A stretch of 64,000 bases of DNA from Phallusia mammillata (GCA_965637545.1 OZ281500.1:10354001-10418000); one strand, 5' to 3'. Positions 22,501 to 28,869 are shown, numbered from the stretch's first letter. Notes: generated from the letters alone by a model not told the origin. Made by a program: numbers and translations.

Positions 22501-25500
22501 ACATGTAAAGATTTTTGTAGGACAAAAAATTACATATCTCAGTGAAAAATTACGTATCTCGTTAAAGCGTTATAATGCCAATATTCAAAATGTCACATTT
22601 TATGTGGGAAAGCATGTTAAAAGATGCTGATTAAACGTGTTAGCAAAACTAAACAACGTAACCAATATTTCATACTAAAAAATGAAAGCGGTAATAACTA
22701 GAGATGTACCGAATATTCGGTTTGCCGAATTTATTCGGCCGAATCAGTCATTTTTGCAAAGATTCGGTTTCGGCCGAATAATTTGTTGCGATTCGGCCGA
22801 AACCGAATCTTTTACGAACATAAATTTAAAGCGTTAAACGTGTCTTCTCTGCTTATTAAGGTGCCACGCAATCTTTCAAAAGCCCAAACATAACGAAAAT
22901 TGCGTTAATTTTTATCTTTTTCAACACATTGTCGTTTTTCCCAATGTAGTCAACAAAAGTATTTCATTGGGAGGTTGCCAATCATGCTTGGGGCAATTTT
23001 AAACCCCACAGAACTGAAATGAGGACGAAACACAACTATTCTGCGCTATAGCTGTCTGGTAGATAAACATTTTTTATTGTTAAACGCATAGCGTACGACT
23101 TCGCGTGACGTCATAAAAGATTCGGTTGATTCGGCCGAATTTATTCGGCAAAACCGCCGAATATTCGGTTTCGACTGAATCGAAATTTAGCCGATTCGGT
23201 ACATCACTAGTAATAACAGTAAAACATGTTTACAATAAAATATGTCAGTTATGGAGTTCGAAACGGAAGACGCAAAAAAGCATTGAAACACACTACACAT
23301 TTGGTATTACTCGTAATCAGCAAATCTGCAAATCAAGCAGATATAGTTTTTTTCTGTTATGATTTTGTCTGCTACATTTTGTTCTTACTTATGGGGATTT
23401 CCCCAGAGGCTTCGCTAACGGAACCTTCAACCTCTTCACCTATCCAGTCAAAAAATATGCGTCAGTACAGTTAGATGGAGAAAACAATATTAACCAATCA
23501 AGCGCTTCTAATGAAACTAAAAATCAATGATTTCTGAGCATTTTCTGTCTGCATTGGGTAATTTGCTTGCCAGCTAAATTATACTTGTGCTAATGGAAGA
23601 AGGGACAATGATTTGTCACCAAATATGCGTTAAAATGATTAACTGTTTGACCGTTAGAAATTAAAGAAACATATGAGCAGGCTAAAAGCCAATCCAAAGG
23701 AATTGTCAAACTGGAATTGTTATTGAAGAAATTATGTTTCGAAAAATCGAATATCTGAACTAGTCATTAAAATCTTGAAACTAGGCAAATATTCGTTTTT
23801 TAAGATTTTCTGTATCGGAAGCCAGCCTATACGTATTGCTCTTACTTATGGGAATTTCCCCAGAGGTCTCGAACATTGCTGACCCTTCAACACCTTCACC
23901 TACCGTTATATGTACAAACATTACTTTGGGCGGACATAAAACTAAATCGTTACTTGAGTACAGAGTTGCAAGTCGGGCCTTTCGGGCCGGGTTCGGGCTT
24001 AGGTATTTGTGAGAAAACGGGCTTAAAACGGGCCTGACTTAACGTTCCGTGTCCGCCACTGTTTTTTAAATAAAATCACTCAGCTAAGTAACAATTCTCT
24101 AGCTTTGACCTAATGCCCACCCTCCTCTAAAACGTATTGTTTACCCCATTGTCTACTATTGTTCATTGTGTTTGTTGTCTTCATCTGTTTTCTTTCTCAT
24201 CCTTTGTTGCAAGGCTTTCGTGGATAGGCCTGTCAATCAAAATTTCGGGCCTAAACGGGCTTTGCAAAAACGTTTCGGGATCGGGCGGGGCTTCGGGCTT
24301 ATACTTTCGGGTTCGGGCCGGGTTCGGGCTCAAATTTCGGGCCCGCTTGCAACTCTGGTTTAGTAACAACAAACACCAAACATATTGTCAGTGCTGAGCA
24401 ATGTAATATGTGGTAAACGTCACTGGGTAATTCAGCGGTTGACGAGCAACCAACTGTAGAAAACTTGGGTGAAATTCAAGTCAATCTTAATTTCAACTCA
24501 GAGGTTTATATTTGAGGTTTTTTGAGCAAAATCTGCGCGACGTGAGGCACAAAAGCGCCAGCAATAAGGGCCAAGCGGAAGCGTTTCTACATGCTTACGT
24601 GAATTGCCTTCTCCCGAGGCGCTTTCCTCAACTTCTTCCGCTGTTACATATTTGCAACAAAACCCGGTTAAAACACAGTATGTAATTTTGTTGCTTATTT
24701 GGGGAATTTGCATTGATCCTATTTACTGCTATTAGTGTGCGAATTTACTTACCAGATGTTTCGCAAGTCGCGCCTGAGAACCCTTCGGTACATTCACATG
24801 TGTTGGTGCCGACGCAAGCTCCACCATTCTCACAAGTTGGGTTGCATGTAACTAGACAGAACGAAAAACGTAAAATACTTTTCAAACACTCTAAAGTAAC
24901 AGAAGCTTACATTGGCACTGTGGTGTGTTCGCTGGGGAGTCGCATCCTTGGCTGAAAACGTTGAACACGGAACCCGCAGGACATGGCGTCAACGAGACCT
25001 TGCCGTCGGACATGCATGTGTAGTAGTGGATACAATCCCCTGGTACTTCGATATATTCTCCAGGTGCGCTGCACAGCGACGAGACTGCGAAAATAGCAAT
25101 GTATCTCAGTGGATTTTCTCAAACACATCGGTAAACACGTTTGTCTTTTTAAAAGAAATTGCGCGTGAATGGGAAGTTTACAATATGGAAATAAAATATG
25201 AATTCTTTTGTAGATCTTGTTCAACGCAAAGGCAATTGAATTAGCGTGTCTCTAATTCTGCTTTTGTGCCAGGTCAAACAATGGCCAAGACAAGACCTGT
25301 GAGTTCAGGATACGCCAAGGTAAATGACAACAGCAGCTAATGTGACAACGCCTATTGTGTCTCTAACGTGCGGGGCGTCGCAACTTTTGCCACCAGCGGT
25401 CTTTCGCAACTGCGACTAAACTTTACCTTGTGGGTCGGAACTTTAAGCGTGACCAAACAACACAAGTTATTGTATTCTGACGGTTGTTCGGTTCATAGCA

Positions 25501-28500: not shown

Positions 28501-28869
28501 AGTCTGGCTCCGCACACGCCTGTGTTGTGTGCGAAATATTGGATCTCACCCGAAGCAAAACAGTACAAACATTTTGAGGGGTTGATTTTGTTCTTTTTTT
28601 GTTTAACTTCTAATTTTATTCCATGTGATCTAAACGCTGTCGAGCGGTTTAATTCAATCGTCTCATGCCAACGATTTGACACTTACTTTACACCGAACAC
28701 TTACAGCGGCAGATTGTAGCACAGTATGGTATATAAGCTGGCAAGATGGGCAACTAACGTCAAACAAATTTTACACCCCAAAAATTAACTTTTAAAACAG
28801 AAAGTGTGTACCTTGAACTGTAAGAACGACGCTTAGCAGCCCAGCTATTAAGATCAGCCGGGTGTCCAT
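1516..28869 (-). CDS. Secreted gel-forming mucin / VWF-like mosaic protein with a chitin-binding domain, 54 coding exons, ~3975 aa
   Basis: Exons in transcription order (window coordinates): 28812-28869, 28201-28241, 27676-27841, 27208-27300, 26594-26689, 26437-26532, 25928-26065, 24911-25084, 24753-24851, 24599-24640, 23846-23899, 23389-23439, 22104-22356, 21531-21751, 20562-20689, 20058-20274, 19679-19913, 18458-18632, 18197-18359, 17785-17885, 17505-17633, 17170-17345, 16887-17005, 16353-16593, 15893-16092, 15503-15720, 15141-15314, 14699-14869, 14497-14601, 14119-14352, 12761-12980, 12453-12661, 12090-12303, 11840-11973, 11661-11768, 11303-11507, 10922-11106, 10647-10806, 10281-10489, 9861-10047, 9428-9652, 8946-9082, 8451-8672, 8037-8261, 7663-7881, 7408-7588, 7038-7307, 6729-6862, 6122-6343, 5697-5915, 2340-5543, 2028-2225, 1795-1917, 1516-1665. 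Splice phases chain consistently (total 11928 nt, divisible by 3). VWD motifs (TFDG, GDPH, LCGxCGxFNG), C8 and TIL Cys patterns; D3 end [30 protein letters not shown] resembles MUC2/MUC5 D3. The donor of the second coding exon is ambiguous. Confidence 0.9.
2340..5543 (-). CDS. 3204-nt mucin exon: Cys-rich module, cystine knot, PTS repeat array, CysD domain, (QS)n region
   Basis: TTACAG acceptor next to 5543, GTATGA donor next to 2340. Reads CK-like C..GCAS....MSYCDGFC....CSCCQP....LKCKNG......SCDC, then T/P-rich repeats, then [12 protein letters not shown]...IC..PVEIEC...CDLNSGLAC...[11 protein letters not shown] (WxxW CysD). Confidence 0.92.
3210..4985 (-). repeat. Coding tandem repeat, 16 x 111 bp (37 aa: [37 protein letters not shown])
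   Basis: CCAGAACC recurs at 3289, 3400 etc. (period 111); 16 ESGSGE motifs counted in the ORF translation. Confidence 0.97.
13134..14042. mobile_element. Non-autonomous hAT (Buster/Charlie-like) element, 909 bp, in a mucin intron
   Basis: 15-bp perfect TIR CAGTGGTTCTTAACC / GGTTAAGAACCACTG; perfect TSD GTTTAAAG at 13126-13133 and 14043-14050. Confidence 0.93.
15315..15502 (-). other. GC-AG intron in the mucin VWD3 domain
   Basis: Upstream exon ends ...YTFQ (TTCCAG|GCAAGT); the next exon starts GDCEY, restoring the conserved F-Q-G-x-C-x-Y motif only if the GC donor is used. Confidence 0.85.
22699..23209. mobile_element. hAT (Ac-like termini) MITE, 511 bp, in a mucin intron
   Basis: TIR TAGAGATGTACCGAAT / ATTCGGTACATCACTA; perfect TSD GTAATAAC at 22691-22698 and 23210-23217; dense ATTCGG/CCGAAT subterminal repeats at both ends. 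Confidence 0.92.
23389..24640 (-). CDS. Three acidic Ser-Gly micro-exons of the mucin (24599-24640, 23846-23899, 23389-23439)
   Basis: AG/GT-bounded 42, 54 and 51-nt phase 1-1 exons encoding [31 protein letters not shown] and [16 protein letters not shown]; the last two are clear paralogues. Confidence 0.8.
23961..24357. mobile_element. hAT-type MITE, 397 bp, in a mucin intron
   Basis: TIR CAGAGTTGCAAG / CTTGCAACTCTG; flanks CTTGAGTA / GTTTAGTA (6 of 8); repeated TCGGGC/CGGGCT subterminal motifs. Confidence 0.82.
24911..25084 (-). CDS. Mucin exon encoding a chitin-binding type-2 (CBM14 / peritrophin-A) domain
   Basis: [54 protein letters not shown]: six-Cys spacing with P.DC..YY.C and CP.G..FN...CD hallmarks; phase 1-1 exon. 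Confidence 0.88.
25928..26065 (-). CDS. Mucin exon encoding a fibronectin type-II domain
   Basis: [41 protein letters not shown] matches FN2 C.FPF.Y.G..Y..C......PWC.TT; phase 1-1. Confidence 0.88.
26437..27841 (-). CDS. Mucin exons encoding an N-terminal (QS)n tract and four EGF-like modules
   Basis: SQSQSQ...[31 protein letters not shown]; [28 protein letters not shown]; [28 protein letters not shown]; [28 protein letters not shown]. Confidence 0.88.
28812..28869 (-). CDS. First coding exon of the mucin (signal peptide)
   Basis: [19 protein letters not shown](G) followed by a GT donor; TTTTAG acceptor 14 nt upstream of the ATG. Confidence 0.8.

What the first reader, a model, noticed from the sequence alone, without database searches (positions are those of the whole stretch)
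24753..28869. Chitin-binding adhesive head (EGF x5, FN2, CBM14) on a gel-forming mucin
Seen: signal peptide, RKRR, QS, 4 EGF, FN2, CBM14 and EGF precede VWD1; from FN2 onwards each module is its own phase 1-1 exon, a typical exon-shuffling signature. Established: CBM14 binds chitin and FN2 binds collagen/gelatin; vertebrate gel-forming mucins start directly with VWD1. From memory (needs verifying), a chitin-binding gel-forming mucin, Ci-GFM1, was reported in the Ciona gut chitin membrane, so this may be a relative. Inference: it tethers a mucus/GAG gel to a chitin nanofibre mesh in the gut barrier or feeding net. Together with the post-CK extension this is the strongest candidate for an undescribed system here.
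Basis: partly seen in the sequence, partly recalled or inferred. Interest (0 to 1): 0.8.

Follow-up and report, generated by a model that had tools for sequence, protein, structure and literature searches.

The report
Sea-squirt chitin-binding gel-forming mucin head
The head is real: a signal peptide, EGF repeats, a fibronectin type II domain and a chitin-binding domain sit in front of a gel-forming mucin, but it matches the Ciona gut-membrane mucin Ci-GFM1 described in 2018, so it is a new member of a known kind.

Summary
Observation confirmed. On the minus strand, nine canonical GT-AG exons (28869-24753) encode a 337-aa head. It runs signal peptide, RKRR, (QS)n, EGF x4, FN2 (Pfam 51 bits), CBM14 (40 bits), EGF5. 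Exons 4-9 are each one module in phase 1-1. Exon 9 splices in frame to a VWD1 exon (22356-22104). D1-D2-D'D3, a ~50-aa PTS, D4, VWC repeats and a cystine knot follow.

Splicing is supported by three relatives:
- An intron-free environmental contig (P0029/L001, 53% identical) is colinear through every junction into VWD1.
- A genomic contig of another species (L002/L003) has the same phase 1-1 exons with one EGF fewer.
- Published Ci-GFM1 primers, named by exon, translate to peptides matching exons 1-5 and the VWD1 start.

None of the primers tested matches the window DNA, so this is a relative, most likely the orthologue, in another sea squirt. It is not the Ciona locus.

Nakashima et al. 2018 already reported Ci-GFM1's CBD and FN2 domains and proposed that it lines the gut chitin wall. 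Neither that proposal nor expression in this species has been tested; no RNA run covers the exons.

Small new points: FN2 and CBM14 are the best-conserved head modules. Amphioxus and acorn-worm relatives have only the EGF stalk. Another note of this scan (s1-399094) reports a different CBM14-bearing VWD gene elsewhere in this genome.

The parts
28812..28869 (-). Exon 1: start codon and signal-like peptide ([20 protein letters not shown]), ends in phase 1
   Evidence: Met aligns with Met1 of P0029. Signal peptide inferred by eye.
28196..28241 (-). Exon 2 (46 nt): [15 protein letters not shown]. It holds the only furin-type R-x-K/R-R motif in the draft Met-to-CK model.
   Evidence: Ciona Ex2 primer encodes QNEQRNK(R). 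The segment is absent from P0029.
27676..27887 (-). Exon 3: linker ...PTSLDLIQH, a QS dipeptide repeat, then EGF1; ends in phase 1
   Evidence: Ciona Ex3 primer encodes PDSLLSIQH. QS repeat kept in P0029 but not in L002.
27208..27300 (-). Exon 4: EGF2, phase 1-1
   Evidence: Ciona Ex4 primer encodes ECTESC, versus ECTNMC here.
26594..26689 (-). Exon 5: EGF3, phase 1-1
   Evidence: EGF_2 29.1 bits.
26437..26532 (-). Exon 6: EGF4, phase 1-1
   Evidence: L002 has one hybrid EGF exon in place of EGF3+EGF4.
25928..26065 (-). Exon 7: fibronectin type II domain, 4 Cys, phase 1-1
   Evidence: Pfam fn2 51.4 bits. Best solved relatives are MMP-9, MMP-2 and fibronectin FN2. 59-67% identity among three species.
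24911..25084 (-). Exon 8: CBM14 / peritrophin-A chitin-binding domain, 6 Cys, phase 1-1
   Evidence: Pfam CBM_14 40.5 bits. Best solved relative is squid chitin-binding beak protein 3, 7BWE, E=2.5e-7. 49-61% identity among three species.
24753..24851 (-). Exon 9: EGF5, phase 1-1
   Evidence: EGF 23.1 bits.
22357..24752 (-). Intron 9 (2.4 kb) between the head and VWD1; contains interspersed repeats
22104..22356 (-). Exon 10: N-half of VWD1, joined in frame to exon 9
   Evidence: VWD 34.2 bits. Colinear with P0029 and L002.
21531..21751 (-). Exon 11: C-half of VWD1
   Evidence: VWD 42 bits. The donor at 21531 is less certain.
5073..20689 (-). Rest of the mucin scaffold: C8-TIL of D1, D2, D'D3, ~50-aa PTS (12661-12442), D4, VWC-type exons in a duplicated block, cystine knot. 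The exon chain is approximate.
   Evidence: Pfam on ORF pieces; heuristic chain.

Best explanation
This is the N-terminal head of a sea-squirt gel-forming mucin. The gene is most likely the orthologue, in another species, of Ciona Ci-GFM1.

Shown here:
- One gene encodes, in order: signal peptide, a short basic (RKRR) segment, a QS-rich linker, an EGF stalk, FN2, CBM14, EGF5, and then the D1-D2-D'D3 / PTS / D4 / VWC / CK scaffold.
- There is no furin-type site at the D2/D' boundary.

Inferred:
- The head stays on the mature polymer.
- Polymerisation through CK dimers and D3-mediated N-terminal multimers, as in MUC2 and VWF, would bring several heads together at each N-terminal node.
- The clustered CBM14 domains would grip chitin nanofibres of the gut envelope (peritrophic-like) membrane with avidity. 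This would fasten a glycosylated mucin net onto the chitin mesh.
- The EGF repeats would act as a rigid spacer.
- FN2 is the best-conserved head module together with CBM14. It probably contributes a second binding surface; the partner is unknown.

The phase 1-1 one-module exons explain how FN2 and CBM14 could be inserted into an older EGF stalk, and why the EGF number varies between species.
For: - Gene structure and domains.
- Head-to-VWD1 continuity on an intron-free relative: P0029/L001 is 53% identical over head residues 1-334 and colinear across all junctions, with junction codons giving conserved residues.
- Its Pfam architecture is the same: fn2 45.7 bits, CBM_14 34.7 bits.
- A second species' genomic contigs, L002/L003, show the same order and the same phase 1-1 exons of 93, 96, 138, 174 and 96 nt.
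- Ci-GFM1 is 2880 aa with CBD, FN2, D1-D2-D'D3-D4, VWC, CK and a 50-aa central PTS. It was the third most abundant protein of the gut chitin membrane.
- Ci-GFM1's exon-named primers translate to peptides matching e1-e5 and the VWD1 start.
- The window has the same ~50-aa central PTS.
- The six Cys and the aromatic positions of CBM14 are kept in three species. FN2 and CBM14 are more conserved than VWD1.
- The closest solved CBM14 relatives are chitin binders.
- RKRR at residues 29-32 is the only R-x-K/R-R motif in the draft model.
Against: - No transcript evidence in this species. Four RNA-like runs covered only intron repeats, and no RNA-like run held words of exons 8-9.
- I could not retrieve the Ci-GFM1 sequence (LC072665). 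Orthology and the N-terminal position of its FN2 and CBD therefore rest on primer-derived peptides, the published domain list and domain arithmetic.
- Chitin binding has never been shown for any GFM head; in Ciona it was shown only for VCBP-C's CBD.
- The Met-to-CK exon chain downstream of exon 11 is approximate, so a furin site could have been missed.
- Multimer geometry is extrapolated from vertebrate MUC2 and VWF.
Confidence: 0.72

Rival explanations
1. The same protein works elsewhere. The head anchors mucus in the pharyngeal feeding net (endostyle or dorsal lamina) or in the tunic, binding cellulose or other glycans rather than gut chitin.
For: - The window gene has a large post-CK PTS with EESGSGE repeats and a CysD domain, typical of bulk mucus.
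- No tissue data exist for this species.
- Ciona gut frameworks also contain intermingled cellulose fibres.
Against: - Ci-GFM1 was accepted as a gut-membrane protein because it was more than 5-fold enriched over dorsal-lamina mucus cords.
- CBM14's solved relatives are chitin binders.
Confidence: 0.12
2. The head is mainly an assembly or regulatory pro-region rather than an adhesive. A short propeptide is cut at RKRR, the EGF, FN2 and CBM14 modules steer intracellular packing or polymer geometry, and chitin binding is incidental or lost.
For: - A furin-type motif just after the signal peptide is shared with Ciona: RKRR here, RNK(R) there.
- D1-D2 of VWF and mucins is known to guide multimerisation (general knowledge).
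Against: - The RKRR segment is absent from P0029, and L002 shows no QS linker, so these parts are dispensable.
- FN2 and CBM14 are the most conserved head modules, with all Cys and aromatic positions kept. That argues for a retained ligand-binding role.
- There is no furin site at D2/D'.
Confidence: 0.08
3. Gene-model artefact: the head exons belong to a separate upstream gene or to a non-functional exon array, and are not part of the mucin mRNA.
For: - A 2.4-kb repeat-bearing intron separates exon 9 from VWD1.
- There are no RNA reads for this species.
Against: - Exon 9 has no stop and ends at a canonical donor in phase 1. The VWD1 exon has an acceptor in the matching phase.
- The intron-free contig L001 reads straight from the head into D1-D2-D'D3.
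- L002 has the same layout.
- The Ciona authors amplified from Ex1-Ex5 toward the VWD1 primer.
Confidence: 0.03

Closest known systems
Ci-GFM1, gel-forming mucin of Ciona intestinalis type A / C. robusta (LC072665; Nakashima et al. 2018, PMC6109156)
   Same: - Gel-forming mucin scaffold: D1-D2-D'D3, ~50-aa central PTS, D4, VWC, CK.
- It carries a CBM14-type CBD and an FN2 domain.
- Exon-named primer peptides match e1-e5 and the VWD1 start.
- A furin-type basic motif lies in exon 2.
- TEETGSGE-type repeats follow the cystine knot.
   Different: - It is a different species: none of the 17 Ci-GFM1 primers tested matches the window DNA.
- The N-terminal residues differ: MKTQFVFMGC versus [10 protein letters not shown].
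- The window gene appears longer to the cystine knot (~3,100-3,300 aa versus 2880 in total), partly from a duplicated block of VWC-type exons.
- The full Ci-GFM1 sequence and the position of its FN2 and CBD could not be inspected here.
Vertebrate gel-forming mucins (MUC2, MUC5AC) and von Willebrand factor
   Same: D1-D2-D'D3, D4, VWC, CK; CysD (Mucin2_WxxW) and PTS as in mucins.
   Different: - None of the 120 best family members listed carries fn2 or CBM_14.
- Vertebrate proteins begin with VWD1 directly after the signal peptide (general knowledge).
- VWF is cut by furin after D2; no such site was found here.
Amphioxus mucin-2-like XP_035684622.1 (P0065) and Saccoglossus mucin-2-like XP_077861966.1 (P0056)
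   Same: EGF repeats of the same type lie ahead of VWD1, 43-46% identical to the window's EGFs in amphioxus.
   Different: No FN2 and no CBM14. The FN2-CBM14 pair looks like an insertion into an older EGF stalk.
Insect peritrophins / insect intestinal mucin (CBM14 plus PTS proteins of the peritrophic matrix)
   Same: The working principle is the same: a glycosylated mucin-like protein fastened to a gut chitin mesh by CBM14 (general knowledge; contrast drawn in PMC6109156).
   Different: They have no VWD/C8/TIL/CK polymerising scaffold and carry many CBM14 copies rather than one. They are not homologous as whole proteins.
Firefly hypothetical protein KAF5291992.1 (P0045)
   Same: It combines VWD-C8-TIL units with CBM_14.
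   Different: Its CBM14 repeats (three stretches) lie at the C-terminus. It has no FN2 and no EGF stalk, and is probably an independent invention.
VCBP-C of Ciona
   Same: A CBM14 domain used to sit on the same gut chitin membrane. Chitin binding by that CBD was shown experimentally.
   Different: It is an Ig-V effector protein, not a polymer-forming mucin.

Membership tests
Gel-forming mucin / VWF superfamily | N-terminal D1, D2, D'D3 assemblies (VWD-C8-TIL units) | tested here: met
   Pfam VWD, C8, TIL, VWF-E hits in order on exon pieces.
Gel-forming mucin / VWF superfamily | D4, VWC domains and C-terminal cystine knot | tested here: met
   VWD/C8/TIL at 12.0-10.2 kb, VWC hits, Cys_knot 26.8 bits.
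Gel-forming mucin / VWF superfamily | PTS (mucin) domain and CysD | tested here: met
   ~50-aa PTS at 12661-12442. After the cystine knot: long PTS repeats and Mucin2_WxxW at 75.2 bits.
Gel-forming mucin / VWF superfamily | Cysteines that form the intermolecular disulfides in D3 and CK | not tested
   This would need a reliable full exon model and an alignment to MUC2 and VWF.
Ci-GFM1 orthologue group | Head exons homologous to Ci-GFM1 exons 1-5 and the VWD1 start | tested here: met
   Primer-derived peptides against the window: QNEQRNK / [10 protein letters not shown]; PDSLLSIQH / PTSLDLIQH; ECTESC / ECTNMC; EGSCS / GGSCT; PYHSSNVCSY / [10 protein letters not shown]. These are short peptides only.
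Ci-GFM1 orthologue group | FN2 and CBM14-type CBD plus a small central PTS on a GFM scaffold | tested here: met
   Window. Ci-GFM1 description. The position of FN2 and CBD in Ci-GFM1 is not stated in the accessible text.
Ci-GFM1 orthologue group | Reciprocal best match of the full-length proteins | not testable with these tools
   LC072665 was not retrievable. Three word searches were limited by query length or returned no tunicate.
Ci-GFM1 orthologue group | Presence in the gut chitin membrane / gut expression | tested here: inconclusive
   No RNA-like run covers the exons. The tissues of those runs are unknown.
CBM14 (peritrophin-A) | Pfam model above the gathering score; six-cysteine pattern | tested here: met
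   40.5 bits against a cutoff of 22.1. Cys spacings C-12-C-5-C-10-C-12-C-8-C, read from the sequence.
CBM14 (peritrophin-A) | Conserved aromatic positions (between C2-C3 and C4-C5) | tested here: met
   H-Y-Y and V-F-N-V-F here. H[YF]Y and VF[ND]V are kept in P0029 and L002 and align with 7BWE and insect chitinase CBM14.
CBM14 (peritrophin-A) | Binds chitin | not testable with these tools
   Needs a pull-down with recombinant protein.
Fibronectin type II | Pfam model above the gathering score; four cysteines and aromatic core | tested here: met
   51.4 bits against a cutoff of 22.2. Aligns to MMP-9, MMP-2 and fibronectin FN2, including CxFPF...W.C.
Insect peritrophin / intestinal mucin | Multiple CBM14 with PTS and no VWD scaffold | tested here: not met
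   There is a single CBM14 and a full VWD scaffold. It works alike but is not a member.

The most novel reading that the evidence does not exclude
FN2 and CBM14 always sit side by side and are the most conserved head modules. They may form one composite anchor that binds two partners at once: chitin through CBM14, and a second fibre or protein of the membrane through FN2. The second partner could be the intermingled cellulose, a collagen-like protein or a microbial surface. The clustered heads would then make the mucin the cross-linker that sets the mesh of the gut barrier. The conserved furin-type cut after the signal peptide, and Gln-rich QS stretches at both ends, might add regulated activation or transglutaminase-type cross-linking. 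None of this is described for any mucin.
Probability: 0.1. Interest if true: 0.65.

Novelty: new member of a known kind. Interest (0 to 1): 0.3.

Why it matters
Ci-GFM1 is the molecular argument for the idea that vertebrate mucus layers evolved from chitin-based gut membranes: it is a mucin that still holds a chitin-binding domain.

This report shows that the same head, with the same exon design, exists in at least three further species: this genome, the source of L001 and the source of L002/L003. It also shows that FN2 and CBM14 are its most constrained parts, and that amphioxus and acorn-worm relatives have only the EGF stalk.

That makes the family a defined, testable object. The binding test the Ciona authors left open can now be designed on conserved residues. 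The gain of FN2-CBM14 by exon insertion can be dated once the species are named.

It does not reveal a new kind of system.

Tried and rejected
- **RNA evidence.** Read laying on 22050-28049 with four RNA-like runs gave contigs only on intron repeats (22.7-23.2 kb, 24.0-24.4 kb) and none on exons. A second run search with exons 8-9 found only two DNA-like holders. This gives no support and no refutation.
- **Retrieving Ci-GFM1 or other tunicate full-length proteins.**
  - The whole-library search with the VWD1 exon gave 396 hits, none above 47% identity. Only P0029 carried the head.
  - A profile with an amphioxus backbone returned amphioxus and vertebrate proteins only.
  - The head of P0029 found only generic EGF proteins within 499-1587 aa.
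  - The VWC-CK part of the 3' ORF found nothing within 595-1893 aa.
  - The length window of the word search cannot be met by any stop-free reference from this gene, so these blanks say little.
- **Ciona primers as DNA probes.** Scores were at chance level (10-22 of 21-49 nt), so the window is not the Ciona robusta locus.
- **Full exon chain by a homology-guided dynamic programme.** The second pass gave 3296 aa but carried some intronic ORF extensions. I quote only about 3,100-3,300 aa and do not use the near-match to 2880.
- **C-terminal tail.[11 protein letters not shown]-stop here against DLAKEMNDLIN-stop in Ciona model KH.L108.37 is suggestive but no better than chance by score.
- **PMC2042186 (Lang 2007).** Not held.
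- **Structure prediction.** Not run. Pfam and PDB sequence matches already settle the domain identities, and a shallow alignment would not give a trustworthy inter-domain arrangement.
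Full report
**1. What is in the sequence**

The finding lies on the minus strand. Translation of 28900-24600 in three frames shows nine open pieces. Each is bounded by AG...GT.

Joining them gives an open 1012-nt coding stretch of 337 aa. The exons are:
- e1 28869-28812: Met plus a hydrophobic leader.
- e2 28241-28196: ...LLRKRRNVS.
- e3 27887-27676: a QS dipeptide repeat and EGF1.
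- e4 27300-27208: EGF2.
- e5 26689-26594: EGF3.
- e6 26532-26437: EGF4.
- e7 26065-25928: FN2.
- e8 25084-24911: CBM14.
- e9 24851-24753: EGF5.

Exons 4 to 9 each hold exactly one module and all begin and end in phase 1.

Pfam confirms the modules. fn2 scores 51.4 bits (E=1e-13) and CBM_14 scores 40.5 bits (E=3e-10). EGF-type models hit all five EGF exons.

Against solved structures:
- The CBM14 exon is closest to squid chitin-binding beak protein 3 (7BWE, E=2.5e-7) and to insect chitinase CBM14.
- The FN2 exon is closest to the collagen-binding FN2 repeats of MMP-9, MMP-2 and fibronectin.

**2. The head belongs to the mucin gene**

Exon 9 has no stop and ends in phase 1. After a 2.4-kb intron, an acceptor at 22356 restores the frame and opens into ...[18 protein letters not shown], the N-half of a VWD domain. 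Exon 11 (21751-21531) holds the C-half.

Pfam on the downstream exon pieces gives, in order:
- D1 (VWD-C8-TIL), D2, D' (TIL, VWF-E) and D3.
- A ~50-aa PTS stretch.
- D4.
- A series of VWC-type exons that look like a duplicated block.
- A cystine knot.
- After the knot, long PTS repeats carrying EESGSGE, a CysD (Mucin2_WxxW) and a QS-rich tail.

A homology-guided exon chain puts Met to the end of the cystine knot at roughly 3,100-3,300 aa. That chain is approximate and I draw nothing from the exact number.

**3. Independent support from relatives**

A search of 1.84 billion representative proteins with the VWD1 exon gave 396 hits. Only one, P0029, carries the same head.

P0029 comes from a 4,830-nt JGI environmental contig (L001). 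The contig is intron-free. It reads from a 5' leader through head, D1 and D2, then a second ORF with D'D3.

It is 53% identical to the window's head over residues 1-334 and colinear through every predicted junction. The codons split by introns here give residues that are conserved there...KE-F-ECT...CQI-P...TCD-F-S. Pfam finds fn2 and CBM_14 in it too.

Two Logan contigs, L002 and L003, come from ERR7439267 and SRR25569782. They encode the identical VWD fragment, so they are most likely one further species.

They are genomic and show EGF, EGF, EGF, FN2, CBM14, EGF, VWD1 in the same order. Their exons are 93, 96, 138, 174 and 96 nt, all phase 1-1, with the same junction codons. That species has one EGF exon fewer: a single exon resembles the front of EGF3 and the back of EGF4.

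Per-domain identities among the three species:

| Module | Identity |
|---|---|
| FN2 | 59-67% |
| CBM14 | 49-61% |
| EGF5 | 42-55% |
| N-half of VWD1 | 35-45% |

All cysteines and the aromatic positions of CBM14 are kept.

**4. Relation to the published Ciona protein**

Nakashima et al. 2018 (PMC6109156) found Ci-GFM1 as the third most abundant protein of the chitin-framed gut envelope membrane. It is:
- 2880 aa, with 30 domains of 13 types.
- Built of D1, D2, D'D3, D4, two VWC and CK.
- Equipped with a 50-aa central PTS, a CBD and an FN2 domain.

[quoted passage not shown] A 2021 review still calls its localisation and function open. I found no later study.

I could not obtain the sequence (LC072665). 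The paper's Supplementary Table 3 lists primers named by exon. Translated, they give peptides that match the window's exons one for one:

| Ciona primer | Ciona peptide | Window |
|---|---|---|
| Ex2 | QNEQRNK(R) | [10 protein letters not shown] |
| Ex3 | PDSLLSIQH | PTSLDLIQH |
| Ex4 | ECTESC | ECTNMC |
| Ex5 | EGSCS | GGSCT |
| VWD1 primers | APTHSSN, PYHSSNVCSY | [17 protein letters not shown] |

None of the 17 primers tested matches the window DNA beyond chance. The window is therefore not the Ciona robusta locus but a relative in another species. Other notes of this scan call the genome a sea squirt; I did not test that myself.

The domain count fits: SP + 5 EGF + FN + CBD + 18 D-assembly domains + PTS + 2 VWC + CK = 30. 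This is my arithmetic, not a stated fact.

Ciona primers placed after the cystine knot encode TVPVKPTPTTEETGSGE... This resembles the EESGSGE repeats here, so the 'post-CK extension' is probably present at the Ciona locus as well.

**5. How it most likely works**

*Shown:* one secreted protein carries a single CBM14 next to an FN2 at the tip of an EGF stalk, ahead of a polymer-forming mucin scaffold. The only furin-type motif in the draft model is RKRR at residues 29-32, and none lies at D2/D'.

*Inferred:*
- The head is not shed with a propeptide as in VWF.
- CK dimerisation and D3-mediated N-terminal multimerisation cluster several heads.
- The clustered CBM14 domains bind chitin nanofibres with avidity and fasten the glycosylated net to the gut membrane.
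- FN2 probably adds a second binding surface with an unknown partner.
- The RKRR/RNKR motif may release a 12-residue propeptide. It is absent from P0029, so it is not essential to the design.

Gut is favoured over feeding net, because Ci-GFM1 was more than 5-fold enriched over dorsal-lamina mucus cords.

**6. Comparison and evolution**

- None of the 120 best GFM, VWF and FCGBP relatives listed has fn2 or CBM_14.
- Amphioxus mucin-2-like (XP_035684622.1) and Saccoglossus mucin-2-like have EGF repeats of the same type ahead of VWD1, but no FN2 or CBM14. The EGF stalk therefore looks older, and FN2-CBM14 looks like an insertion of two phase 1-1 exons.
- A firefly protein (KAF5291992.1) joins three VWD units to C-terminal CBM14 repeats, probably independently.
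- Insect peritrophins and intestinal mucins work alike but lack the VWD scaffold.

**7. Limits**

- There is no RNA evidence in this species.
- The Ci-GFM1 sequence was not seen.
- The species behind L001 and L002/L003 are unnamed.
- The signal peptide was judged by eye.
- The exon chain beyond exon 11 is approximate.

**8. Verdict**

This is a new member of a known kind, with modest added value from the exon design, the conservation pattern and the taxon spread.

Noticed in passing
window 22650-23250 and 23850-24450 (intron 9): Interspersed repeats. Many short contigs from four RNA-like runs lie here at 90-99% likeness, with loose ends running into unrelated sequence. None lies on the neighbouring exons.
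   Followed up: partly
window 10047-7639 versus 7588-5073: The VWC-type C-terminal region looks like a tandem duplication of a block of about six exons. Matching exon starts include [12 protein letters not shown] / [20 protein letters not shown] / [10 protein letters not shown] and PGETWQEPC / [10 protein letters not shown].
   Followed up: partly
window 5073-2337 (3' ORF) and Ciona primers: The post-cystine-knot PTS repeats (…[18 protein letters not shown]…) have a counterpart in Ciona. Primers GfmEx3toCk_r1/r2 encode TVPVKPTPTTEETGSGE…, so the extension after the knot is likely shared, although Ci-GFM1 is drawn as ending with CK.
   Followed up: partly
window 27860-27795 (exon 3) and 2798-2500 (tail): QS dipeptide repeats, written as a CAGTCA-type hexamer microsatellite, occur both in the head linker and in the C-terminal tail. 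The head repeat is kept in P0029 but replaced by an acidic EIDEETTE linker in L002.
   Followed up: partly
window 1707-1519: The last coding piece ends ...[12 protein letters not shown]-stop. Ciona model KH.L108.37 ends DLAKEMNDLIN-stop (from primer GfmG37_r1). The resemblance is suggestive but not above chance.
   Followed up: partly
L004:1452-2459 and L004:3762-4328: An ENA metagenome contig has an intron-free VWD ORF beside a Peptidase_C14 (caspase-like) gene. It is an unrelated organism and not part of this family.
   Followed up: no
L001:2850-2870: The environmental contig's reading frame is broken by a stop between D2 and D', which splits it into two called genes. Whether this is an assembly error or real was not examined.
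   Followed up: no
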